Sequence record: MK250019.1
Length of the DNA: 64,000 nucleotides
Reading direction: 5' to 3' (one strand)
Each line of letters begins with the position of its first letter. The first letter of the stretch is position 1. The position numbers and the translations under genes were made by a program. The notes beneath the pieces were generated by a model that was not told where the DNA came from, did not search any database, and was given only the letters and a program-made list of their open reading frames with translations. This document shows positions 24,190 to 37,978 of this stretch, in pieces.

Positions 24190-24431
24190 TTGATTTAATG
24201 TAGACAATAATAAGATATTAGTATATAATATATAAATTGTTTAATGAAACAAATTAATGAATTTAAAATTAAATTNNNNNNNNNNNNNNNNNNNNNNNNN
24301 NAATTAATAATAAATAACATATAAATAATATAACAATTAAAAACAAACGCTTATTTAATTTTCGTAGCGTTATGGATAAGTTGAATGAAAATTCAGAAAT
24401 TCCTTTTAGGACGAAGATACTAGTTATGTAT

Positions 24432-24517
24432 GCCAAGATGGTGGAATAGGTAGACACGCTAGACTTAAAATCTCGTGGACTGAAAAGTCCGTACGGGTTC
24501 GAGTCCCGTTCTTGGTA
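24432..24517 (+). tRNA. trnL: tRNA-Leu(TAA), CCA not encoded
   Basis: Acceptor GCCAAGA/TCTTGGT, D-arm GTGGAATAGGTAGACAC, anticodon loop CT-TAA-AA (24466-24468), long variable arm GGAC/GTCC, T-arm ACGGG-TTCGAGT-CCCGT. Followed by CAA, then a 13-bp terminator hairpin. Confidence 0.93.
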
Positions 24518-24573
24518 CAAAAATTATTATAGAGAATAAACAACATATGTTTATTCTCTATTTTTTATATAAT

Positions 24574-25352: not shown

Positions 25353-26489
25353 ATGATTACAATAACAGAACAATATATAAAGGATTATAAAGATAAGTTA
25401 GATAAAATAGCAAAGTCATTCGATTTGGATAAACAGAAGATAATCGTTGAAGAATTATCTATTAAAGTTTCAGCACCAGATTTTTGGGATGATTTTGAAA
25501 ATGCAACAACTATTACAAAGGAACTTAATACAGCAAAAGAAAAAATTAAAGATGTTTCACATATCAATATATTAATAGATGATCTTGAAACTGCTTTAAT
25601 GTATTATAAAGAGTTTGAAGGTAAGGATGAAGAAGAACTTGTTAATCTTGCTAATGATGAATTAATTAAAGAATTTAAAATATTTGAAAACAAATATAGA
25701 TTTGTAGATCCGACTGATTCATTGGGAGCAGTATTAGATATTAATGCAGGTGCAGGTGGAACAGAAGCAAATGATTGGGCAAATATGTTATTCAGAATGT
25801 ATGATATGTGGGCTAAATCAAATGGTTATAAATTTAAGATTTTATATTATTCAGAAGGTGATAAAGTAGGTATTAAAAATGTATCTATTGAAATTACCGG
25901 TAATAATGCATATGGTACATTAAAAGGTGAAACTGGTGTTCATCGTCTTGTTCGTGTTTCTCCTTATAATGCGCAGGGAAAGAGAATGACAAGTTTTGCG
26001 GCAGTTTCTGTTGTTCCGTTGGTAGATAATTCAATTAAAGTTGAAATTGATGAGTCTAAATTAACAATAGATACATTTAGATCTTCTGGTGCCGGTGGAC
26101 AAAATGTTAATAAAGTTGAATCAGGTGTACGTGTAAATTATATGTATACAGATCCTGATACAGGTGAAACTGAAAAGATTCAGGTTGCAAATACAGAAAC
26201 GCGTGATCAACCAAAAAATAAGGAACGTGCAATGCAAATTCTTAAATCTATTCTTTATAAAAAAGCGTTAGATAAACAGCTTGCAAAGAAAAAGGAAATT
26301 GAAGATGCTAAACTAAAAAATGAATGGGGTGCACAGATTAGATCTTATGTATTTGATGATAAGCGTGTAAAGGATCATCGTACTGGTTATCAAACAACTG
26401 ATGTAGATTCTGTTATGAATGGAAATTTAAATGGATTTATAGAATCTTATAATAATTGGATAATTGAGCAGGAAAATAATAAACTTTAA
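25353..26489 (+). CDS. prfB: Peptide chain release factor 2
   Basis: AGAGGTEANDWA, GETGVHRLVRVSPY (RF2 SPF-type anticodon), SGAGGQNVNK, WGAQIRSYV. Continuous ORF with no internal frameshift site. Confidence 0.95.
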   Translation: MITITEQYIKDYKDKLDKIAKSFDLDKQKIIVEELSIKVSAPDFWDDFENATTITKELNTAKEKIKDVSHINILIDDLETALMYYKEFEGKDEEELVNLANDELIKEFKIFENKYRFVDPTDSLGAVLDINAGAGGTEANDWANMLFRMYDMWAKSNGYKFKILYYSEGDKVGIKNVSIEITGNNAYGTLKGETGVHRLVRVSPYNAQGKRMTSFAAVSVVPLVDNSIKVEIDESKLTIDTFRSSGAGGQNVNKVESGVRVNYMYTDPDTGETEKIQVANTETRDQPKNKERAMQILKSILYKKALDKQLAKKKEIEDAKLKNEWGAQIRSYVFDDKRVKDHRTGYQTTDVDSVMNGNLNGFIESYNNWIIEQENNKL

Positions 26490-26594
26490 TATATATTCAT
26501 TATATAAGTATTTAATGAATTATTTTTCTATTTAAATAAAAATGTGTATCTTTGTATTGTTAATGAAATAATAAACAGTTAAAAATATAAAGAT

Positions 26595-26813
26595 ATGAAA
26601 ATTAAGGTTGGTAGAAATAATGAGTTCGTAGAACTTGAAGAATATGATTCAATTGTAATTATTGATGATAATGGTCATGAATTTCGTATCTCACCTACAC
26701 AGAAATGTTGGGGTAAGGGTTTTGAAATTAATGATCCTGATGGAAGTTTGGTAATTCGTCCATGTGTATCTAATGAAGTAATGGTATTCTCATCTTCAGA
26801 TGTTGGTTTGTAA
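26595..26813 (+). CDS. Small hypothetical early protein
   Basis: ORF behind TATCTTTG at 26547. Confidence 0.55.
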   Translation: MKIKVGRNNEFVELEEYDSIVIIDDNGHEFRISPTQKCWGKGFEINDPDGSLVIRPCVSNEVMVFSSSDVGL

Positions 26814-26892
26814 ATTATAACTTTCATTAATAACACAATCACAATAATTATTATTTTACAGTTTGATTTTAAACTAAATTTAATTATTATAT

Positions 26893-27444
26893 ATGAGTTG
26901 TCATACTTGGGTTTACAAACGTATTGATTCAATGTCTCGTGAAGAGATTAATCAAGAAATTGATTGTGTTATTAATGAACGTTTATCTCGTGCATACATG
27001 AGTGAAAATGAAGATGAATATGCAAATAAAATGGTTAAGTTAACAAAAGACAGTTCAATTTCTCCATTATCATATTCAGATGCAATTAAACGATATAAAG
27101 AAGCACGATATGAAACATCACTTATTGTAAAGAAATTACATGAAGCTAAACGTACAGGTGATTTATCTCTTATAACAGATATAAATGGATTTGATACAGC
27201 TGAAAATAATACATATCTATTTTTATGTAATGATATGCCATTTAGATGTTATGAATATACATATAAACAATGTCATAATAAAGATGAACTTATTGAATTT
27301 GTACATACAGTTGAGCCAAATAATATTGCAATATATGATGAAAATAATAATCAACATATAGGTATTCCTGAAGACATAGATGAACGAATATCTGATTTTT
27401 TTGATAAACATGGTATTAACAATTTATTAATTGAATTTGGTTGA
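26893..27444 (+). CDS. Hypothetical protein
   Basis: 183-aa TAG-free ORF with TGA stop. Confidence 0.6.
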   Translation: MSCHTWVYKRIDSMSREEINQEIDCVINERLSRAYMSENEDEYANKMVKLTKDSSISPLSYSDAIKRYKEARYETSLIVKKLHEAKRTGDLSLITDINGFDTAENNTYLFLCNDMPFRCYEYTYKQCHNKDELIEFVHTVEPNNIAIYDENNNQHIGIPEDIDERISDFFDKHGINNLLIEFG

Positions 27445-27445
27445 T

Positions 27446-27898
27446 ATGAGAACAAATATAGATTTATATACTATTGCAATGAACTATACAAATTGTAATA
27501 TTGAACTTGATTCATTTTCATTACTTTGTTGTCTTGATGAAATAGGATTTACATATCCAAAAACAAACAAATATTTAAATGTTGGTGCATGTAGGAATTT
27601 AAGAGAATTTAATGAAATACATGATAAAATATATTATTATATGATTTATGATTTTCTACGTTCTACATATGGTATTTCAGTAACATTTTTTGAAGGTAAA
27701 TCTATTTCTTATAACGAACGAGGTGTAATAGAAAAAGTTGAAATTGAAGGAATGGATAAAGAATCTGACATATATATGATTATATCAAATATGGTATTTG
27801 ATAATATTGATGTAGCATATAAGACTGTTGCACATATGATTGTATCAGATTTAAATTGGAGACATATTCAAAAGAAAAATTTTTCTAAGATAAAATAA
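27446..27898 (+). CDS. Hypothetical protein (paralog family with 53895 and 55851)
   Basis: ATG 27446 chosen over TTG 27431; similar architecture to the other two members. Confidence 0.55.
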   Translation: MRTNIDLYTIAMNYTNCNIELDSFSLLCCLDEIGFTYPKTNKYLNVGACRNLREFNEIHDKIYYYMIYDFLRSTYGISVTFFEGKSISYNERGVIEKVEIEGMDKESDIYMIISNMVFDNIDVAYKTVAHMIVSDLNWRHIQKKNFSKIK

Positions 27899-27968
27899 GA
27901 CTTTATTATTAAACACATATATAAAGAATAATTAATTTAACATATTAACTTTTAAATTTAGATTTAGC

Positions 27969-28532
27969 ATGGGATTATTTGAACTTTTTAATAAGAAAAA
28001 TGCTGCAGATGTAAGTACATTGTTTACAGATGAAAATAAAGTTTCTATTTCAGCAGCAGATGCATATAAGAAGTCTCGCTATGGTATCTTGAAATCTGAT
28101 AAGATGATGCTTGAGGAATTCTTTACAGATGTAAAACTTATGGTAGAGCAGAAGAATATGGAGCGTAGTTATTGTGGTATGCTTCAGCTTGATGATGACA
28201 TTATTAAGTTTCTTCCTCGTATTAAGGATCGATTAATGCGTCAACTTGGATTTAAGGTAATCATTCTTGATGATAATTCTGTTATTACAAATAAAGAATT
28301 GAAGTCAGAAGATACAATTAAAACAGGTAGTACATTTGTTTTGCTTGTATGGAATAAACAGGCAATTGAGGAAGTTGAAGAAATGAAAGCAAACAATTTG
28401 TTGGAACCTATTTCAGATGACTCATCAATTGCAACAGAAACAGTAGATTCGATTAAGGATGAAAAGAAAGAGGAAATAACTCCTGCTATTTCTGGAAATT
28501 CTAATCCTATTAAGAAACATCTTAATAGTTAA
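27969..28532 (+). CDS. Hypothetical protein
   Basis: 187-aa TAG-free ORF with host-like codon usage. Confidence 0.65.
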   Translation: MGLFELFNKKNAADVSTLFTDENKVSISAADAYKKSRYGILKSDKMMLEEFFTDVKLMVEQKNMERSYCGMLQLDDDIIKFLPRIKDRLMRQLGFKVIILDDNSVITNKELKSEDTIKTGSTFVLLVWNKQAIEEVEEMKANNLLEPISDDSSIATETVDSIKDEKKEEITPAISGNSNPIKKHLNS

Positions 28533-28571
28533 AAAAATTGTTAAAATATAGACTTTTTAAGTATTAAGACA

Positions 28572-28815
28572 TATAAATAATAAGAAGAGAAAAATGGTGA
28601 TTATATGATTATACATAAGATGCTTTTTAATTATCCTTAGTTTTTAAATGTATAATCATTTCCGTTTAAATGTTTTGGTTTTGGATAATTAACAATCATT
28701 TAAACAAATTAAAAAGAAGGGAGTGTTTATCACTTAGATAAACACAAAAGAAGAAAAGGAAAGATAGATGATAAGGGTGAAAGTCGTTGTGATAACGGTT
28801 TTCACTCATTTTTTT
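28572..28815 (+). ncRNA. Candidate structured ncRNA with kissing-loop architecture
   Basis: TATAAATA at 28572. Stems 28605-16/28648-59 (12 bp) and 28664-72/28697-705 (9 bp) have complementary loops 28627-36/28683-92 (10 bp). Hairpin 28723-45; terminator 28775-28815. Confidence 0.6.
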
Positions 28816-28897
28816 ATTATTTAATATTTTTATATTTAAATAAAAATGTGTATCTTTGTAATATACTATAATAGTAATTATTAAAATTAATTTATAT

Positions 28898-30487
28898 ATG
28901 AAATATTTGTTGAATTGGATCGAAAAAGAATTAAATCCAGAACGGCATGTAAGTTCAAAAACAACATCATCTGAATATTTTTATTTTTATGGTGCAAAAG
29001 TTCGATTTGCTGATCATATTTCAGATAGAAATGATAGTGATTTGGAAATTATATTAGTAAAGGATTTAACTGGTCAAAATAAACATTATCTGATAAAAGA
29101 ACAGAATTATCCTGCAATGGTATCTGTTCCTGATGTAAAAACTTTAAAAATTGTATTATCTACATTTATATTCCAATTTAAGAATAGATATTCAGATAAT
29201 ATAGTAAAAGAAGCAAATAAGTCAGAAGAGAATAAAAAAATATTAAATACTTGTTTAAATCAGCTACGTTCAAATAATAATGCTAATTTAGATATATTTC
29301 AAACATTTGATAAATGCATTTATAGTATTATTCCTCAATGGCATAATATGAAACAAATATATAAAATTATATTCATGCATTTATTTAAATTATGTGGTGA
29401 TATTGACAGTATTAAGAATATTATTGATGTAGAATTTCCAAATGATAACCAAAATGATTGGCATCATAAGAATACTAATGATATTATTAATATATTAGTA
29501 ACATATTTTCCTGATGATTATAATATCAGAAATATTATTGGATTAGACGAAACTATTAGTCCTAAAGAAAAATTTGCTAATTGTTTTAATGAATACTATA
29601 AGAATCTTGATATTAATATAGAAGATATGAAGGAAGAAGATAAATCTAAATTCTTAAATGCATTTGGAAGTCTTCTTGCATTAGATACAAAAAATAAATA
29701 TGCTAAATGTTCAGATCATCAAAAGAAGTATATCCGTTCATTACTTAATGAACATATATCATATGATAATATTTTGAAATTTGTGAATAGTATATTTGAT
29801 GTTATGTTTACACCAAAGATGAAACATAAAAACGATGCGCCACAAATGAAAGTTATTGTTGATAAATTCTTGCGGTTGTATAATATTGGAATTATTAAAT
29901 TCCCAAATGAATATGACTTTGATTCTACTTATAACAATAATTTTAATCATATTGATGTAACACAGGAAGAATCTACTGATATTGAAAAAACTACTGATGA
30001 TACTACTATTAGTGAAAATATAGAAGTAACAGAAGTTAAAGAACCATGTAATGATATTCAATATGAAACTATAGTAGATTATATTCCTGATACTGATATT
30101 ACTATTAAAGATTCATATAATTATGCATCTACAGAATTTGATGATATTCAAGATATTCATGAAATGTTTGAACATAATCAAATTAATATACTTAATGATG
30201 TAATTAAGAAAATTAATGATACCAATAAGTATACATCATTTGAAACTAGACGTATTACTGATATATTTGCATCACATTATTCAGATATATGGGAGAAACT
30301 TACATGGACACAAAAAGAACTTTGCTCATCTATTATAACAAATGAACGAATGAATTTGAGTGAAACTGATTATATTATCAATAAAATATTTGATAAAACA
30401 TCGTTTAATTTCCCTGTAACGGAACTTTGTCGTAAATATATAAAAGAATATAGTCAACGTATAAAGGAGAGCCGTATGGCTGCTTAA
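28898..30487 (+). CDS. Hypothetical protein (529 aa)
   Basis: TAG-free ORF behind TATCTTTG at 28851; followed by hairpin AAATAGGATAGAT...ATCTATCCTATTT. Confidence 0.7.
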   Translation: MKYLLNWIEKELNPERHVSSKTTSSEYFYFYGAKVRFADHISDRNDSDLEIILVKDLTGQNKHYLIKEQNYPAMVSVPDVKTLKIVLSTFIFQFKNRYSDNIVKEANKSEENKKILNTCLNQLRSNNNANLDIFQTFDKCIYSIIPQWHNMKQIYKIIFMHLFKLCGDIDSIKNIIDVEFPNDNQNDWHHKNTNDIINILVTYFPDDYNIRNIIGLDETISPKEKFANCFNEYYKNLDINIEDMKEEDKSKFLNAFGSLLALDTKNKYAKCSDHQKKYIRSLLNEHISYDNILKFVNSIFDVMFTPKMKHKNDAPQMKVIVDKFLRLYNIGIIKFPNEYDFDSTYNNNFNHIDVTQEESTDIEKTTDDTTISENIEVTEVKEPCNDIQYETIVDYIPDTDITIKDSYNYASTEFDDIQDIHEMFEHNQINILNDVIKKINDTNKYTSFETRRITDIFASHYSDIWEKLTWTQKELCSSIITNERMNLSETDYIINKIFDKTSFNFPVTELCRKYIKEYSQRIKESRMAA

Positions 30488-30538: not shown

Positions 30539-33500
30539 TTATATTGCATATCCAGAATTTCCAGTTGATTTATTATCAGAATTTGCATTTTGCTTTGCTT
30601 GCCATGCCCTATCCATTGCAGCTTTATCAACATCCTAAAATTTATGTATATCATCAACTATATATGTATTTCGTTTAGGCTGTTTTATTGATTGCATCTT
30701 CATATGTTTATGAGGCGGAATATGAGGCTTATTATCCTATAACTTCATATTTTTCTATCTACTTCGTAATTCATCATATGTTGATTCTATAATATCCGCA
30801 AGAGATAACATATCTTCTGTACTTATATTATCTAATTCATTAATATCTATTGACGTTAATGCTTTTAATTTTTCTGTAAGTTTTTTATCATCTGTAATAT
30901 TTACTAATTTCATTTCTGGTTTATAATCATTATTATCAGTAATATTATCAAATAACATTGCGGAAGGAATATCATCTGTAATAACAGGTTTATTCATTAC
31001 CATTTCTGATTTTTCATTAACAGATGTATTAGAAATAAATGGAATATTTGCAGTTGAACTATTATTAATATTCTATGTCATTTGCATATCTATAATACTT
31101 TCATTCTTTAATAACTTACTCATTACCATCTTTGTTTTATATTCATTTGCATTTAATTCTGTCATACTCATATCAGGATTATTATCAACAAATTCTGTAT
31201 GTGTCATCTGCATATTAGGTATAGACGAATCAGTATTTAATCTTGTCATATCCATATCAGATAATGAAGTATTTGATATTACTTCTGTCATTTTCATACT
31301 CGGATTTTCAGTAATCTAATCGATATTAGTCATTTTCATATCAGATGTAGAAGCATTCATATCAAGATGAATCATATCCATATTTGCAATAGATACATCA
31401 TTATTAGTAGTTGTTAATATCATATCAGGTAATGATGTATCAGTTATAGGGTAAATAAAATCCATATCAGAAGTAGAAACATCTATATTAAGATGTATCA
31501 TATCCATATTTGCTGTAGATATATTCTAGTTTAATGTTGTCATATCCATATTTGCAATAGATGAATTCTGTATTAACTGTAACATCTAACCATTAGCAAT
31601 AGAAGTATTAGATATAAGTGTTGTCATATCCATATTTGCTATAGAAACATTCTAATTTAATGACGTCATATCCATATTTGTTATAGATGTATTTTGACGT
31701 AATGATGTCATATTCATTTTTGGATTTGTCTATTGAGAATTTAACATAATCATATCCGTAGGATTTGTCTAATCTGTAATTTCAATATTATTCATTAATG
31801 TTGAAGATTTGAATGTATCATTTTCTGTTGGAATTAAACCAGATGTTGGCTTAGAAAGATACATATCCATTGTTGTCATTTGATTATGTGCCTATGGTCT
31901 TGCATCGCCTTCTAATGGTTGTAAATTATGCTGTTCTTTACTAATAGTCTATGGATTATTTACTAATGTCATAGATGAATTACTTACATCCTATGATACT
32001 GGTATAAATGTCATTGAATTATGATCTGAATTTATATTATTAGTAACTAAATTCATTGATGCCTTACTTGTATCTATATATGTTGAATCATTACTCATAT
32101 TCATATCGTTATGATCTGTATTTAATTCAGGTTTTGTATACTCCATTGAATTATGTTCTGTATTAATCTATGGTTCTACAAATGTCATTGAATTATGTTC
32201 TGTATTCATAACAGGTGAAATATAATTCATATCATTATGTTCATCATTTATATCAGGATTAACATAATTCATATCATTATGATCTAAATTCATTTCTGGA
32301 GAAACATAATTCTAATCAGTCTTACTAAGATTAAATTCTGGTTCTACATAATTATGATGTTCTTTATGTAGATTCATTTCTGGTTCTACATAATTCTAAT
32401 CAACTTTATCAAGATTAAATTCTGGTTCTACATAACTATGATGATTTTTATGTAAATTCATTTCTGGAGAAACATAATTCATATCATTATGATCTAAATT
32501 CATTTCTGGAGAAACATAATTCTAATCAGATTTATCAAGATTAAATTCTGGTTCTACATAATTATGTTTATTTTTGTCTAAATTCATTTCAGGTGAAACA
32601 TAATTCTAATCAACTTTATCCAAATTCATATATGGTTTAATATAATCCATAATACTATGGTCTAAATTAAACTCAGGCTCAACATATGTTTGATTTGGTT
32701 TATTAAGATTAAACTCTGGTTTAATATAATTCTATTTAAATTTATCGAGATTAAATTCTGGTTTCACATAATTCATATCATTATGATCTAAATTCATTTC
32801 TGGTGAAATATAATTCATATCATTATGCTCTAAATTAAATTCTGGTGTTATATAATCATATTCTGGTTTATCTAGATTTTCATCAAGTTCTGTATAATTC
32901 TATGATATTTTATCTAAGTTTTCATTCAGATGAATATAATTATGTTCAGGTTTTTCAAGATTTTTCTAAATAGAAGGATCAATTAATCCAAAACTTGCAT
33001 CACTTCCAATAATCTGAATTTTTGGTTCTAACTTAGTTGCAGATGTATCTATAATACCTGGATCTATTATATTATAATATGCATTACTTCCTACAACATA
33101 AGTATTTCTTAACATATGTAATAACATTACCTTTATACGATTTTTCATCTATTGCTAAGCTTTAACAACATCTGGACCGCATAAAAGTTGCTCATGATCA
33201 TATATATAAGACCATTCATATGGTCTCTATAAATCATTATAGAACTAATCTCTGTCTGGATTTCTAGAATCACGAACTAATACAGGTCTTGAATGAATAA
33301 CTTTTTTAAGATATTTTTTCAAATCCTTCCATGAACTTATAGTATAAAGATTATCTCTTACATTTGCCTCATGCCAACTATTATCTGGTAATTGTGGACC
33401 ATATACATCTGCAGTTCCATATAATTTGTCATAATCTGCATTATCACCAACTTTATGTGTAATTTCTTTATCAAAATATGCAGTATATTCAGATGGCATC

Positions 33501-34699
33501 ATAAACATACGTCTCATCCATCTTGTTCTGAAATTCGCATGATTATCTGCATTAGTTGATGTATAGTCATTTCGTTCTGATATGGACTAAAAATCAGAAA
33601 TCCAATTAACTGTATTTTTTACATTTGAATTTGGTTTATGGTCTGTCTAATTAGGATCTAATGCATCTATCTTTTTCATTAAACCATTAGAATAAAATGT
33701 TTTTACATTTTTTACAGAAATTGTTATTTTTGTTTCTGCATCTTTATGTTCATCATATGCAGTTGCATACTCATTATCCCATATTGATTCAATATCAATT
33801 TCACATGGACCGCATTCTAACGCATATATAGGAAAGTCGTTTTGCTCTACACTATATACAGCAGTTGCATTTCCTGTAGATTTATCCCATTTATAACCAG
33901 TCTATAAAATACGTCTGTCAAATACATAAATAATCATTTTGAAATATCTATATATATCTGGTAATATCCATCTTTGCCAAACATCATCATATGCAGCTTT
34001 TCTATACATTTCCAATAATGTACGAATTTTCAAATCAATTCCTTCATAACATTCTAATGTAATCTTTGCATCCTTAAGTCGTACTCCTTTTCCCGGTTCA
34101 AATGATGTCAGTTTTTCTAATCCCGTAATTTTTTTGAACAGATAAGGCATACTTCTCTATATTTCATAAAGACCTTGAACAAATGTTTTAATATAAGATG
34201 CACGCGCATCTTCATTCCTGTTCATCAGATAATTATATGTATTATAATGTTCTTGATTACTCCAATTTTCCGTATTATCAAATTCTAAAAAATTTAAATC
34301 AAGTAAACCCATTGGAAATTGATCATAATCTTCATAATATATATTATTATAAAGACTTGTTTTCTATTGGTTCTTTATTGTTTCTGTATCAAGAACTGAA
34401 CAACCCCAATCACCAAATTCAACTTTAAACATAAGTCGAGTAGGATCTTCAAAACCTGATCTGAATACTTCAGAAGACATATCAGTACCATATTCATTTC
34501 CCATATGAAATCGTTCCATGATTTCATTCTGTTCCATAAATCGTCCAGATGATAAAATCCACGATTCACTGTCAGTTACTTTCTACTCTAATTCATTTGT
34601 TTTAGTATCTCCAGTAAGTAATGAATTAAATCCTTTTAAAAAATTGTATGCAGAATTTGTCTTTTTATTTAAGCCTTTTAATGTACTAAAAATACCCAT
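30539..34699 (-). CDS. Large structural protein (1386 aa, code 15): tail-tube/baseplate-like N-terminal domain + long 14-aa tandem repeats
   Basis: Six track ORFs share one frame and are joined by TAGs (both ends and part of the interior translated by hand). Contains ITLECYEGIDLKIRTLLEMYRKAAYD...WILPD and repeats EMNLDHNDMNYVSP / NMDMTSLNQNVSIA. Confidence 0.7.
31070..32960 (-). repeat. 42-nt (14-aa) coding tandem repeat array, two sub-families
   Basis: The unit CATTTCTGGAGAAACATAATTCATATCATTATGATCTAAATT (42 nt) recurs about 32050-32960; a MDMT-type 42-nt unit recurs about 31070-31740. Confidence 0.85.
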
Positions 34700-34715
34700 A
34701 ATTTAATTAATCATT

Positions 34716-36266
34716 TTATTTTACTGGTGTAATGAATGGTGTTTTATTAGGATTATTCGGTGTATCTACCAATATCAATTTACTTTCATTTCGTGTTACT
34801 GGTGAATACATATCTAATTTATAATTATCTCCTATTTCATATTCATTTTCATATAATCTGATATTACACATCTATATATTACATCCCTTATCTTCTATAC
34901 TAAATTCATGTACAGAAAAATCAGATATATTCCAAGCAATAGTTGTATCTGTTTTAACAACATCTTCTATTACGCGATCACCAACTTCCTTCGGTGTACT
35001 TATTAATATTCTAGTATTATCAGGTGATATATCTAACATAATATAAGACCATATATCAAATTCAAAATTAATAGGTATATGTTTAGATTTATTACCTACC
35101 TATATCTATAATTCATTCTATCTTATAAGAACGTCAAATGTTATTTTACTATTTTCATCATAACCTCTGATTAATTTATAAATATTAGTTTTATAAATTT
35201 TCAAAAATTGTGAATTTTCATACCATTTTGTTAATTTCTTATTTGCTTTTGCCATATCAGAATTTTTAATGGCAATACCCAATGATTCAACACATTCATC
35301 AAGTTCAACAACAACTGCATTAACTTTTATTAATGTTCCTCTTGTTATTGTTACATTATCTCCTAATTCTAATTTTATTGAAGTGGAAACTCTAAAATAC
35401 CAATTATCAGAATCTTTAGAATAATATACCAATTTTATTACTTTACTATCTTGAATATAACTATTGAGAAAACACCAGCATGAATATATAAGATGATTTC
35501 TTGATGATGATATTTCATATAATAATTCATCATTATATGTAATATTTTTTGATGCAATAGAAAAATCATAATACGCATTTGATATAAGATTTCCATTTGA
35601 ACCAAATATCTAATTTGATACTATAGAATCTATGTCATAATCCTTCTGAGGATCTACATAAGTTGTATTATTATATGATGTTTCTACTGGTGCATCTACA
35701 TCTGCTACTTCTTCTGATATAGTATCTCCAAATAATTCTTCTTGTGATGTTGTAAGTTCTTCTACAGAATCTCTAAATTCCTATGTTTCTTTTCTAGATG
35801 CAGTTGGACTATATTTTGATAAAATAACTTTATAATATGTAGGTAATGCAGCTATTGTATAAATTAATTCAGAAGACTATACTTCAAATAATTTATGATA
35901 AATCTATACATATACAATATCTCCTTTCTATGGCATAGTATTATTTCCAAACATATTTTGCCATTCCTATATAGTTATATTAATTTCAAGGGGCTAAACA
36001 TAATTAAGACCATATAAATCAATAGTATATTCTCCTGGATTATAGTCTGGATTTGAAACAATAACTTTAACAATTTTAGGACATTCGAGACCTACCTATG
36101 TTAATGTATATTCCTATAAAACAACATCTTCAGAATTGATGACAGGTGTTGCACGCGCCCATAAACAGTCAGTACCAACAGTCTCTGTCGCAGACTGTTG
36201 GATTTCCTTTACTGTTTCATACGCGGATTTTATAATTTCATTAATATCAATTCCTAAACCTGCCAT
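34716..36266 (-). CDS. Neck/head-completion protein, T4 gp14-like, with C-terminal extension (code 15)
   Basis: DLYGLNY...MPQKGDIVYVQIYHKLFEV resembles gp14 PREGDLIYFPMDNSLFEI; TAA stop at 34716. Confidence 0.7.
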
Positions 36267-36268
36267 AA

Positions 36269-37978
36269 TTAATTATTTAATGTTTCATTTATTTTTTGTT
36301 CCATTGAAGATAATTCATTACATAATTCTTTAATATTATGTATACGTATCTTTATTTGATTACTATCTTCCTAACATCTTTTTAATTTCTATTCTTTCGC
36401 CCATGTTGACATATATGCATCTTCCTTATTATTCGCATATGTATCTTTAAATGATGATATAGCAATCTATATATTACCATATTGTTGTAACATATTATTT
36501 AACAATTTACTATATACACCATATAACATCATAAGTGATTTAAATTTTATAACGTCATTCCTGTATATATTTTTAATTTCATTACATAATACTTTACCTG
36601 TTTGTGTAAATGCCTATAACTATGGTAATATTTCCTTTAATTCTTTATTAAAATTAGAAATGCCTATTTTTGATCTATTCTATGCAATTAATTTTTTATA
36701 TCTCAAAATATTAGCTCTTGCTATTTTATTGCAATAATCATCTGTTCCATATAATTTCTCATAATCATATGATTCTAATTTTCTACCAAACGCAAAAAGT
36801 TCTGATGATTTTCCACCAGCATATGGATGATATTTTCCTAAAATATCTTTAGTCCATTTATATATCTTTCGTTGCTATTCTTCAAAATCTAATTTTCTCT
36901 GACGTGTTTTTTCTGTATCCAATTTAAACTCATTGTATCCTTTTAAATTAGAATCATCCATTTTTCGTTTACCATTATCTTTAGTTGATATAACATTTCC
37001 ATCATAATCTTTATGTCCACTTTCTGGTATATAAACAATGAAATAATCATCATTTGAATTTCCCCAACCAGTAAACTTATTTAACTTACTTGATTTTGAA
37101 TATGGATTAGCACCGACTTTCTATAATTTCTTTTTAAAATCTCCATATGCATTTATATATTTCGACAAATCTAAAAAATTCTTCACAAAACCTATTCCAC
37201 ATAATTCTCGTTTATCACCACCACGAGATAAACGAGCAACAGTAGGATATGTTAATACAGTTCCGTCTTTTAATGTCTATGTTAAATTATTAACAATAAG
37301 ATTATCTTTCTTGCATGCGTCTTCAATAATTTCCGGTGTTAATTTATGTGCTTGAAAACTTTGCCACACACGTCCATCTTCAAATGTTATATTTTCATTA
37401 TCTATAGCAAATAATACCATTCTGCCATATACAGAAACTACAAGAATTTTACCTTCTGAATTAAACCAAAATATTGCATATTCATTAATGTATTGTTTTA
37501 GATCCTTATTTTTCTTTAAATCCGATACGGTATACTTTTTAAAGTTTTCATCTGTTAAATTAAATAAATCCAATTTCTGCATAGGAAAAGTTCCATCCGC
37601 ATTACTTAATATTACAGAAGATAATACCTAAGGATCTGGTTTAATAAACAATTTTGATGTATAATCTTTATATAATTCTAATGTTTGCATATATTTGTCA
37701 TGTAATGCTTTCTTCTATTCATCTGTTTTTATAGATTCATGTTGATAACTATACGAATCATATGCTTCAGTTGAATATACAGGAAATGTATTAGAAATAA
37801 TATCATTTAATATTTCAAATTGATTTAATGCTTTTTTATACATTGTTCCAGGATATGGTTGTTTATAATATGTAAACATCTTTCCTTTATCATTAAGAAT
37901 ATCATGAATAACTGTATCTGACTATAAACGTTCAGTTAAATATTTTTCAGTAATATATTTTTTTAAACTAAATTGCAT
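36269..37978 (-). CDS. Hypothetical protein (569 aa, code 15), N-terminal YITEKYLTE
   Basis: Open frame from ATG 37978 to TAA 36269 with TAG=Gln; includes track ORF 37277..37582. Confidence 0.65.

What the first reader, a model, noticed from the sequence alone, without database searches (positions are those of the whole stretch)
28572..28815. Intergenic RNA with two hairpins whose loops are perfectly complementary (kissing loop), behind a late promoter
Seen: TATAAATA (28572); a 12-bp stem ATGATTATACAT/ATGTATAATCAT enclosing TTAATTATCC; a 9-bp stem GTTTAAATG/CATTTAAAC enclosing GGATAATTAA (exact complement, 10 bp). Then a 9-bp hairpin GTGTTTATC/GATAAACAC, purine-rich linkers and a terminator before the next promoter. 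No ORF longer than about 16 codons was found on the plus strand. A tandem TGATTATA offers an alternative register for stem 1. Inference: a roughly 230-nt late ncRNA that folds as an H-H pseudoknot or oligomerises through loop-loop contacts, as phi29 pRNA does.
Basis: partly seen in the sequence, partly recalled or inferred. Interest (0 to 1): 0.8.

Follow-up and report, generated by a model that had tools for sequence, protein, structure and literature searches.

The report
Kissing-loop small RNA of Lak megaphages
A gene-free gap in a giant gut phage (Prevotella phage Lak-A) encodes a conserved, roughly 225-base structured RNA in which the loops of two neighbouring hairpins pair with each other, a new RNA family whose fold is well supported by evolution but whose job is still unknown.

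Summary
The window is Prevotella megaphage Lak-A1/A2 (100% identity). Positions 28533-28897 are non-coding, also when TAG is read as Gln.

The two-hairpin arrangement with complementary loops is unique in the 64 kb. It appeared in none of 30 shuffled windows.

Homologous gaps sit behind the same 187-aa gene in Lak-B, Lak-C and four more distant clades. All four stems and the loop-loop helix are kept there through compensatory changes:
- 99% of cells are paired and 37 of 54 pairs change on both sides.
- One loop-loop position is U-A, A-U or C-G depending on the clade.
- G-U pairs occur only on the + strand.

A conserved two-part promoter (TAGAC-N17/18-TATAAATA) and an intrinsic terminator frame the RNA. 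No reading frame is conserved on either strand. This is therefore a true RNA gene of a new family, with no Rfam match.

"Late" is not supported. TATAAATA is not enriched in the window. The same promoter type precedes tRNA clusters and a GOLLD-like giant RNA.

Whether the loops pair within one molecule or between molecules cannot be told from sequence. Direct transcript evidence for this locus could not be obtained, and the function is inferred only.

The parts
28549..28579 (+). Two-part promoter: TAGAC (28549-28553), an 18-nt spacer, then TATAAATA (28572-28579). The predicted start of the RNA is about 28585-28588.
   Evidence: It is the only exact match in the window (0.09 expected). It is conserved as TA(G/A)AC-N17/18-TATAA(A/T)(A/T)A in front of the RNA in all clades. 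The same type, 85% identical over 46 nt, precedes the GOLLD-like RNA. It also precedes tRNA clusters in Lak-A1. The start site is inferred, not mapped.
28580..28604 (+). Purine-rich 5' leader with the conserved AAUGGUG (28593-28599).
   Evidence: AATGGTG is kept in 14 of the 17 sequences (L017 has AAGGTG; L025/L026 lack it at the 5' end). The short frame that starts at its ATG varies from 4 to 26 codons and has no conserved peptide.
28605..28659 (+). Hairpin H1: a 12-bp stem (28605-28616 / 28648-28659) with a 31-nt loop. The loop carries kissing strand K5 (28627-28636).
   Evidence: Folded in the MFE structure of every clade. Eleven of 12 pairs show changes on both sides and 99% of cells are paired.
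28627..28636 (+). K5, the loop-1 strand of the loop-loop helix (TTAATTATCC).
   Evidence: Exact complement of 28683-28692. The core pairs are 100% kept in 13 distinct sequences. Position 8 is U-A in 7, C-G in 4 and A-U in 2. The duplex energy stays between -8.6 and -13.1 kcal/mol in all clades.
28664..28705 (+). Hairpin H2: a 9-bp stem (28664-28672 / 28697-28705) with a 24-nt loop. The loop carries K3 (28683-28692, GGATAATTAA).
   Evidence: Six of 9 pairs change on both sides and 100% of cells are paired. K3 lies 0-4 nt from the 3' strand of H2 in every clade.
28706..28722 (+). Purine-rich linker 1.
   Evidence: Unpaired in all folds. Purine-rich in all clades that have H3.
28723..28745 (+). 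Hairpin H3: a 9-bp stem with a 5-nt loop.
   Evidence: Kept with different sequences in Lak-B, L028 and L025. Absent from the short clades L027, L029, L047 and L048.
28758..28775 (+). Conserved single-stranded purine tract GGAAAGATAGATGATAAG.
   Evidence: The core GAAAGATAGAT is invariant in Lak-A, B, C, L027, L029, L047 and L048. It is unpaired in the folds.
28775..28815 (+). Intrinsic terminator: a 14-bp hairpin (28775-28788 / 28794-28807, loop 28789-28793) and a T run (28809-28815).
   Evidence: Fold. The homologous hairpins in L027 and L025 are called terminators by the scan (14 pairs, none in shuffles). Seven of 14 pairs change on both sides. Two adjacent G-U/U-G pairs are nearly invariant. 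The apex GTCGTTGTGA(T)AACGG is almost invariant.

Best explanation
This is a gene for a stable, structured non-coding RNA of about 225 nt, specific to Lak-type megaphages of Prevotella.

Shown:
- It has its own conserved promoter, a TAGAC-N17/18-TATAAATA site. In this genome that promoter type also drives tRNA clusters and a GOLLD-like giant RNA.
- It ends at its own intrinsic terminator.
- The transcript folds into two adjacent hairpins whose loops pair with each other over 6-10 bp.
- Downstream come purine-rich single-stranded linkers, an optional third hairpin, an invariant purine tract (GAAAGAUAGAU) and a terminator hairpin with a conserved apex.

Inferred:
- The loop-loop helix most likely forms within one molecule. 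It would stack on hairpin 2, giving a compact pseudoknotted 5' domain that makes the RNA stable and fixes its shape.
- The invariant single-stranded purine tract and the terminator apex would then be the surface that a partner reads. The partner could be a protein or an RNA of the phage's or host's translation or RNA machinery.
- In other words, it would act in trans, as an RNA expressed together with the phage's tRNAs.
For: Identity and non-coding status:
- The window is 100% identical to Lak-A1/A2.
- The gap has no ORF under code 11 or with TAG=Q.
- No frame is conserved on either strand.

Conservation:
- A gap of 275-430 bp with the same architecture follows every homolog of the 187-aa gene. 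This holds in Lak-B, Lak-C and in contigs whose protein is only 46-60% identical.
- The gene downstream of the gap differs between clades: an unknown 529-aa protein, ClpP or PolB.
- A covariance model built from Lak-A finds one copy in the window. It finds all these clades at E values from 1e-7 to 1e-68.

Structure:
- 99.0% of 834 cells are paired. Thirty-seven of 54 pairs change on both sides. None of 500 shuffles reaches this, and slid controls give 34-48% paired.
- The loop-loop helix was not part of the model, yet it covaries (4 of 10 pairs).
- On an alignment of all 17 sequences its core is 100% paired, and one position is U-A, C-G or A-U.
- Its predicted stability stays at -8.6 to -13.1 kcal/mol while its length varies from 6 to 10 bp.
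- MFE folds of six clades give the same two hairpins with open loops.

Strand:
- There are 8 G-U and 0 A-C pairs in the hand-checked helices, plus nearly invariant G-U pairs in the terminator. The + strand RNA is therefore the folded molecule.

Transcription signals:
- The promoter is conserved in all clades.
- The terminators are recognised by the scan.
- The same promoter type precedes a GOLLD-like RNA and tRNA clusters.

Expression, general only:
- Devoto et al. [quoted passage not shown]
- One true metatranscriptome run holds 53% of the RNA's sampled words.

Geometry favouring pairing within one molecule (inference):
- Loop 1 always keeps 6 nt or more of spacer on each side of K5.
- K3 abuts the 3' strand of H2, 0-4 nt away, and the H1-H2 linker is 3-6 nt.
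Against: - There is no direct transcript map for this locus.
- The true RNA runs that hold the flanking genes were not listed as holders of the RNA.
- No partner is known. Antisense matches to the invariant tract in Lak-A1 and Lak-B7 are at control level.
- The upstream protein gave only a poor model with no fold match.
- Covariation cannot separate pairing within a molecule from pairing between molecules. In ROOL RNA, a kissing loop first read as tertiary proved to be intermolecular (bioRxiv 10.1101/2024.12.08.627333).
- The more distant clades L050 and L051 keep only one hairpin, the purine linker and the terminator. The kissing domain is therefore not needed for whatever the ancestral RNA does.
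Confidence: 0.6

Rival explanations
1. Same RNA gene, but the loop-loop pairing forms between molecules. Loop 1 of one RNA would pair with loop 2 of the next. That would give dimers, closed rings or larger RNA-only assemblies, as in phi29 pRNA or the ROOL, GOLLD and manA RNAs of phages.
For: - The two loops are complementary and covary, which fits either kind of pairing equally well.
- In ROOL, a kissing loop found by covariation is quaternary in the cryo-EM structure.
- Natural RNAs under 200 nt can form cages, trimers and filaments (bioRxiv 10.64898/2026.07.01.735769).
- The same phage carries a GOLLD-like RNA under the same promoter type.
- The stability of the kissing duplex is held constant across clades.
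Against: - The hairpins are adjacent (3-6 nt linker). Loop 1 always has long spacers on both sides of the motif, which pairing within one molecule needs and pairing between molecules does not.
- Pairing within one molecule is favoured kinetically during transcription (inference).
- There is no match to the pRNA, ROOL or GOLLD models in this region.
Confidence: 0.25
2. It is a cis-acting end module rather than a free RNA. It would be a structured 3' UTR plus terminator that stabilises or insulates the RF2-to-187-aa operon. Alternatively it would be a conditional terminator (attenuator or riboswitch-like) that gates read-through into the next gene.
For: - It always follows the 187-aa gene, and no terminator lies between that gene's stop and the RNA. 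Read-through transcripts must therefore carry it.
- The terminator is unusually conserved.
Against: - A promoter is conserved directly in front of it in all clades.
- The downstream gene differs between clades and has its own promoter-like element.
- No conserved alternative pairing competes with the terminator. The 5' AAUGGUG can pair with the 3' strand in Lak-A/B, but that pairing does not covary in L027, L047 or L048 (sequences).
Confidence: 0.09
3. The conservation reflects a small protein. It would be encoded either on the minus strand (37 aa, 28696-28809, 'NRYHNDF...LSF') or in a short plus-strand frame.
For: - Minus-strand frames of 26-40 aa with similar peptides exist in Lak-A, Lak-B, L028, L033 and L048.
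- An ATG lies behind the purine tract in several clades.
Against: - The invariant 12-mer is read in different frames in Lak-A and Lak-B, because 1 nt is lost between them.
- L048 changes frame within the terminator.
- The start codon is ACG in L027, L029 and L047 (sequences).
- The plus-strand frames differ in frame and length, and stop after 2 codons in Lak-B.
- Compensatory changes keep pairing, not codons.
Confidence: 0.03
4. It is a DNA-level element: nested inverted repeats that serve as a replication origin, a packaging site or a protein-binding site.
For: - The inverted repeats are AT-rich.
- In some clades the locus lies next to a family B DNA polymerase gene.
Against: - G-U pairs occur only on the + strand, and there are no A-C pairs.
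- Stem sequences change freely while pairing is kept.
- A promoter and a terminator frame it.
- GC skew in the window follows gene direction and shows no turning point at this site.
Confidence: 0.03

Closest known systems
ROOL and GOLLD 'ornate' RNAs of phages and prophages (Rfam RF03087, RF02032)
   Same: - Phage-encoded structured RNAs of unknown function.
- They lie near tRNA genes.
- Kissing loops supported by covariation are central to their architecture.
- A GOLLD-like RNA sits in this same phage behind the same promoter type.
   Different: - Those RNAs are 2.5 to 4 times longer, with many domains.
- This RNA has no sequence or structure match to their models.
- Its multimer state is untested.
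phi29 pRNA (packaging RNA, Rfam RF00044)
   Same: One RNA carries two loops that are complementary to each other. A phage RNA is built around loop-loop contacts.
   Different: - In pRNA the pairing is 4 nt, strictly between molecules, and the loops cannot reach each other within one molecule.
- pRNA sits at the genome end of small protein-primed podoviruses and docks on the portal.
- Here the helix is 6-10 bp, the hairpins are adjacent and have long loop spacers, and the phage is a 540-kb megaphage.
- The locus lies among translation and replication genes, and there is no Rfam match.
Loop-loop tertiary contacts that organise one RNA, such as L2-L3 of purine riboswitches and L5-L13 of cobalamin riboswitches (own knowledge)
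   Same: Two hairpins of one RNA are held side by side by pairing between their loops, and the pairing is kept by covariation.
   Different: - Those contacts are a few pairs within a ligand-binding three-way junction and control an expression platform.
- Here a long Watson-Crick helix joins two independent hairpins.
- No junction, ligand pocket or regulated downstream gene is evident.
T4 'species 1 and 2' stable RNAs (RNA C and RNA D) in the phage tRNA cluster (own knowledge)
   Same: Small stable phage RNAs are made together with the phage's tRNAs, and their function is unknown.
   Different: - There is no sequence relation.
- Those RNAs are processed out of the tRNA precursor.
- This one has its own promoter and terminator and a kissing-loop domain.

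Membership tests
phi29 pRNA (RF00044) | Match to the family's covariance model | tested here: not met
   No hit in 27500-30000 even at E up to 10. No hit in seven homologous loci.
phi29 pRNA (RF00044) | Two loops of one RNA complementary to each other | tested here: met
   10-nt exact complement, kept by covariation.
phi29 pRNA (RF00044) | Loop pairing is between molecules and gives a ring on the portal | not testable with these tools
   Needs native gels, SEC-MALS or cryo-EM. The geometry (adjacent hairpins, long loop-1 spacers) leans towards pairing within one molecule.
phi29 pRNA (RF00044) | Encoded at the end of a small phi29-like genome | tested here: not met
   The host genome is the 541-kb circular Lak-A1. 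The locus lies at about 371 kb, among RF2 and small genes of unknown function.
GOLLD / ROOL ornate RNAs | Match to the family's covariance model | tested here: not met
   No hit at this locus. For comparison, the same scan finds a GOLLD-like match elsewhere in the phage (L008, 59 bits, E 3e-14, below the gathering score).
Independent ncRNA gene (promoter, structured body, intrinsic terminator) | Own promoter, conserved in relatives | tested here: met
   TA(G/A)AC-N17/18-TATAA(A/T)(A/T)A stands in front of the RNA in all clades. It is a single exact copy in the window, with 0.09 expected. Its activity was not tested.
Independent ncRNA gene (promoter, structured body, intrinsic terminator) | Intrinsic terminator at the 3' end | tested here: met
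   14-bp hairpin plus T run. Homologs are scored as terminators, with none in shuffles.
Independent ncRNA gene (promoter, structured body, intrinsic terminator) | Secondary structure kept by compensatory changes; no conserved reading frame | tested here: met
   structure; frames.
Independent ncRNA gene (promoter, structured body, intrinsic terminator) | A discrete transcript is made | tested here: inconclusive
One true RNA run holds 53% of the RNA's words, as contigs only. The literature reports highly expressed Lak intergenic regions without coordinates.
Riboswitch / transcription attenuator | Terminator competes with a conserved alternative pairing and controls the gene downstream | tested here: not met
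   No conserved anti-terminator was found (sequences). The downstream gene differs between clades and has its own promoter-like element.
Type III antitoxin RNA (ToxI-like) | Tandem repeats of a roughly 36-nt pseudoknot unit in front of a toxin gene | tested here: not met
   There are no tandem units in the RNA (sequence). The downstream genes are unrelated between clades.
T4-type late promoter (TATAAATA) | Motif enriched in the genome and placed before late genes | tested here: not met
   25 copies against 41 expected in the window. The two-part site precedes tRNAs, ncRNAs, and NAMPT-like and DnaK-like genes.

The most novel reading that the evidence does not exclude
The loop-loop helix is a quaternary contact. 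The RNA would self-assemble head-to-tail into rings or cages. Together with the GOLLD-like RNA and the tRNA clusters driven by the same phage promoter type, it would form a stable-RNA regulon through which a TAG-recoded megaphage takes over or shields host translation.
Probability: 0.15. Interest if true: 0.85.

Novelty: new variant of a known kind. Interest (0 to 1): 0.62.

Why it matters
Lak megaphages are among the largest known phages and are common in human and animal guts. Their 'highly expressed intergenic regions' have been noted but never characterised (bioRxiv 10.1101/356790).

This locus turns one of those regions into a defined RNA family. The family has a promoter, a terminator and a fold backed by covariation, including a long loop-loop helix. 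That makes it directly usable for probing, native-gel and cryo-EM work.

It also points to a shared promoter class for the phage's stable RNAs: tRNAs, a GOLLD-like RNA and this RNA. That gives a handle on the unknown transcription programme of an uncultivated phage that uses an alternative genetic code.

If the kissing contact proves to be intermolecular, this would add a small natural RNA to the short list of self-assembling RNAs.

Tried and rejected
- **Rfam.** No family matched at the locus or in seven homologous loci, even at permissive E-values.
- **PHROGs and NCBIfam on the neighbours.** Only RF2 (25353-26489) could be named. The 187-aa and 529-aa neighbours have no family.
- **Fold of the 187-aa protein.** AlphaFold2 with a 10-row alignment gave pLDDT 55.6. 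Foldseek against the PDB found no match at E 0.001 or better. The result is uninformative.
- **Reads.** The second run search gave only weak presence data.
- **Antisense targets of the invariant tract.** In Lak-A1 and Lak-B7 there were 8 and 6 matches, against 6 and 4 for the reversed control. The one extra exact copy lies inside a coding region. There is no support for a phage target. Host genomes were not tested.
- **Pattern scan of 185,579 bacterial and archaeal genomes.** It gave 44 hits, all by chance. None aligns to the RNA.
- **Metagenome and IMG/VR scans with the flanking proteins.** They returned only close Lak-A/B relatives. The diversity came from the protein-cluster route instead.
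- **Replication origin.** GC skew follows gene direction only.
- **Small proteins on either strand.** Rejected.
- **5'-3' closing stem between AAUGGUG and the terminator's 3' strand.** It is possible in Lak-A/B but is not kept in the L027-type clades.
- **Alternative register of stem 1, and the TTTAAATG direct repeat.** Both are limited to the Lak-A clade.
- **CM alignment A7.** It places hairpin 2 of the short clades under hairpin 3. The H3 counts are therefore inflated by four rows. The kissing helix was recounted on a purpose-made alignment. There MAFFT puts one gap in L025/L026, which costs one pair.
- **GOLLD family search on whole Lak genomes.** The genome search found nothing, and its own control did not ring.
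- **Masked stretch.** One of the seven genome-wide promoter matches (L054) falls on the window's masked N stretch. That locus was not read or used.

Full report
**What the window is**

The stretch 28400-29000 is 100% identical to Prevotella phage Lak-A1 and Lak-A2. It is 97% identical to Lak-C1 and about 74% identical to the nine Lak-B genomes. None of these records carries annotation.

The genome itself shows TAG read as an amino acid. The minus-strand genes at 30539-37978 carry 31, 13 and 12 in-frame TAG codons. The plus-strand block 25353-30487 around the finding carries none. The gene at 25353-26489 is release factor 2 (TIGR00020, 406 bits, above its cut-off). This agrees with what Devoto et al. 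describe for Lak phages.

**Checking the observation**

The gap 28533-28897 has no sizeable frame under code 11 or with TAG=Q.

There are frames of 23 and 33 codons on the plus strand and 37 codons on the minus strand.

The 236-nt RNA folds 3.2 sd better than its shuffles.

I scanned for two adjacent perfect hairpins of 9 bp or more whose loops share 8 nt or more of complementarity. This site is the only one on either strand of the 64 kb. Thirty shuffled windows gave none at that threshold. Shuffling the two loops reaches the observed 10 nt in 25 of 20000 trials.

**Relatives**

Scans with the flanking proteins in IMG/VR and JGI metagenomes gave only close relatives. The large protein-cluster collection gave homologs of the upstream 187-aa protein down to 46% identity, together with their contigs.

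In every contig that extends far enough past the gene (L031 ends just after it), a gap of 275-430 bp follows that gene. The gene after the gap varies. It is an unknown 529-aa protein in Lak-A/B, ClpP in L027, L029, L047 and probably L048, and a family B DNA polymerase in L025, L050 and L051 (one search shows that the first and last are unrelated).

The gaps share one architecture:
- a TA(G/A)AC-N17/18-TATAA(A/T)(A/T)A promoter;
- a purine-rich leader with AAUGGUG;
- hairpin 1 with a large loop;
- hairpin 2;
- a purine linker;
- an optional hairpin 3;
- the tract GAAAGAUAGAU;
- a terminator.

A covariance model built from six Lak-A-like sequences finds a single copy in the window. It also finds Lak-B (107-114 bits), L027/L029 (63 bits), L048 (54 bits), L025/L026 (51 bits) and L047 (37 bits).

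Two still more distant clades, L050 and L051, have RtcB instead of RF2 upstream. They keep a promoter-like site, one hairpin, a purine linker and a terminator, but no second hairpin and no loop complementarity.

**The fold**

I checked by hand all helices in 17 sequences. Every stem and every loop-loop helix is fully paired in every sequence that has it. Counts on the model-fitted alignment:

| Measure | Result |
|---|---|
| Cells paired | 99.0% of 834 |
| Pairs with changes on both sides | 37 of 54 |
| Shuffles reaching this | 0 of 500 |
| Slid controls | 34-48% paired |

The loop-loop helix was not part of the model, so the alignment was not fitted to it. It still shows four pairs with changes on both sides.

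The model put hairpin 2 of the short clades under hairpin 3. I therefore made a separate alignment that runs from the first base of K5 to the last base of K3 for all 17 sequences. On it the six core pairs are paired in all 13 distinct sequences, apart from one pair that MAFFT displaced in L025/L026. The eighth position is U-A in 7, C-G in 4 and A-U in 2. The covariation score is 0.200 against 0.054 in shuffles (0 of 500) and 0.004-0.082 in slid controls.

The most distant clade that still has two hairpins (L025/L026) keeps the core AUUAUC/GAUAAU. It has replaced four flanking pairs by other Watson-Crick pairs.

The helix shortens from 10 to 6 bp in some clades, but it gains G-C pairs as it does so. 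The predicted duplex energy therefore stays between -8.6 and -13.1 kcal/mol. That looks like selection on stability.

Independent MFE folds of six clades give the same two hairpins with open loops.

**Which strand, and RNA or DNA**

The checked helices contain 8 G-U pairs and no A-C pair. The terminator has two adjacent G-U/U-G pairs that hardly vary. On the other strand these would be mismatches. The folded molecule is therefore the plus-strand RNA, not the DNA and not an antisense transcript.

**Coding**

Plus-strand frames differ in frame, length and sequence between clades. The frame behind the purine tract stops after two codons in Lak-B.

A minus-strand frame of 26-40 codons looks conserved at first sight ('NRYHNDF...LSF'). 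It is not, for three reasons:
- the invariant 12-mer is read in different frames in Lak-A and Lak-B;
- L048 shifts frame inside the terminator;
- the start is ACG in L027, L029 and L047.

The conservation is at the nucleotide level.

**Promoter**

TATAAATA alone means nothing here. It occurs 25 times against 41 expected. What is conserved is the two-part site, of which the window has one exact copy against 0.09 expected.

In the whole Lak-A1 genome the exact pattern occurs 7 times, against 3 for a reversed control. What lies downstream of each:

| Match | Downstream |
|---|---|
| L055 | this RNA |
| L057 | a tRNA cluster |
| L059 | a structured-looking stretch followed by a tRNA |
| L060 | about 150 nt ending in a hairpin and T run |
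| L056 | a NAMPT-like gene |
| L058 | a DnaK-like gene |
| L054 | falls on the window's masked N stretch; not read or used |

.

In a near-identical contig, a site 85% identical over 46 nt to this promoter precedes 1.1 kb without frames. That stretch carries a GOLLD match (59 bits, E 3e-14, below the gathering score). The region is present in all 15 Lak genomes and is 89% identical between Lak-A and Lak-B.

The promoter type is thus used largely for stable RNAs. Nothing shows that it is 'late'.

The region just behind the terminator is a different repeated element with more than 30 copies in the nearest contig. It presumably holds the promoter of the next gene.

**Expression**

Run searches show that several animal-gut metatranscriptomes hold parts of 27969-29400. 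Only one run on record as RNA holds half of the RNA's own words, and that as contigs only.

[quoted passage not shown] They give no coordinates in the text held.

Transcription of this locus therefore rests on the conserved promoter, the conserved terminator and the strand-specific structure.

**How it probably works**

The fold, the strand and the non-coding nature are shown. The rest is inference.

The geometry is the same in all clades:
- K3 lies 0-4 nt from the 3' strand of hairpin 2, so the loop-loop helix can stack on hairpin 2.
- Loop 1 always leaves 6-19 nt on each side of K5, enough to reach across from the top of hairpin 1.
- The hairpins are 3-6 nt apart.

This fits a pseudoknot within one molecule. 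An intermolecular contact would not need these spacers. I therefore prefer a compact kissing-loop 5' domain.

The most conserved primary sequence is elsewhere. It is the single-stranded tract GAAAGAUAGAU and the apex of the terminator hairpin. The one-hairpin clades show that this 3' part, together with a hairpin, is the older core. I read that core as the surface recognised by a partner, and the kissing domain as a later module for stability or shape.

No partner was found. Antisense matches in the phage are at control level, and the neighbouring proteins are uninformative.

The neighbourhood (RF2, tRNA-Leu; RtcB in distant clades) and the shared promoter with tRNAs hint at a role in translation or RNA metabolism. 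That is only a hint.

**The main rival**

Covariation cannot tell a tertiary contact from a quaternary one. In ROOL RNA, a kissing loop first seen by covariation is intermolecular in the cryo-EM structure. Natural RNAs under 200 nt can form cages, trimers and filaments.

It is the reading that would make this locus most interesting. Other rivals are weak, for the reasons given above: a cis-acting end module of the upstream operon, small proteins, and a DNA element.

**Comparison with known systems**

The RNA matches no Rfam family. A pattern of its conserved 3' part finds no homolog in one genome each of 185,579 bacterial and archaeal species. The Lak papers held do not describe non-coding RNAs.

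It works like other phage RNAs that are organised by loop-loop contacts. It is not a member of the pRNA, ROOL or GOLLD families. It is a new RNA family within the known kind 'structured phage RNA of unknown function'.

Noticed in passing
L008:1500-2660 (IMG/VR contig near-identical to Lak-A; in MK250015 at 176279-177679, minus strand); outside the window: A 1.1-kb stretch without reading frames stands behind a promoter 85% identical to the one of this finding. It carries a GOLLD match (RF02032, L008:2005-2448, 59 bits, E 3e-14, below the gathering score of 150). The stretch is in all 15 Lak genomes and is 89% identical between Lak-A and Lak-B, more conserved than the small RNA. It may be one of the 'highly expressed large intergenic regions' of Devoto et al.
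   Followed up: partly
Lak-A1 MK250015: 216236-216266(-), 486004-486034(-), 499288-499318(-), 210985-211015(-), 237875-237905(-) (loci L056-L060): Exact TAGAC-N16-19-TATAAATA sites in the whole genome number 7, against 3 for a reversed control. They precede tRNA clusters (L057; L059 after a structured-looking stretch). One precedes about 150 nt ending in a hairpin and T run before a 299-aa gene (L060, perhaps another small RNA). Others precede a NAMPT-like gene (L056) and a DnaK-like gene (L058). This looks like a promoter class used largely for stable RNAs.
   Followed up: partly
window 28826-28872: The stretch behind the terminator, with a TAnnTTTG-type box, is a repeated element with more than 30 copies in the nearest contig. 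It is presumably the common promoter type of the neighbouring protein genes.
   Followed up: no
window 25353-26489 (+) and 30539-37978 (-): Release factor 2 (TIGR00020, 406 bits) heads the block that ends with the RNA, and this plus-strand block has no in-frame TAG. The three large minus-strand genes just downstream carry 31, 13 and 12 in-frame TAG codons. The RNA therefore sits at a border between unrecoded and recoded genes.
   Followed up: partly
L002:1580-1900 (Lak-C1, MK250029): Lak-C1 has an insertion of about 220 bp exactly at the TATAAATA box, between the intact TAGAC half-site and the RNA. Next to the RNA only TCTAAATA remains. The RNA body is 98% identical. In this strain the RNA may be made with a longer leader or from a weaker site.
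   Followed up: no
window 24278-24518: A tRNA-Leu (anticodon UAA) lies at 24432-24518, with a TATAAATA box at 24320. The place where a TAGAC half-site would lie is inside the masked N stretch 24278-24301. A genome-wide pattern match fell there, and I left it unread and unused.
   Followed up: no
L051:2469-2758 and L050:2463-2805: More distant Lak-like clades have RtcB rather than RF2 upstream and PolB downstream. In the same gap they carry a simpler RNA-like unit: one hairpin, a purine linker and a terminator, with no second hairpin and no loop complementarity. L051 also has the promoter-like site; none was found in L050. The covariance model does not detect them, so homology rests on synteny and motifs.
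   Followed up: partly
window 28643-28650 and 28665-28672; 28649-28656: The direct repeat TTTAAATG gives the 3' strand of hairpin 2 a second possible partner that overlaps hairpin 1. In addition, the 3' strand of hairpin 1 contains TGTATAAT, which reads as an extended -10 box. Neither feature is kept in all clades.
   Followed up: partly
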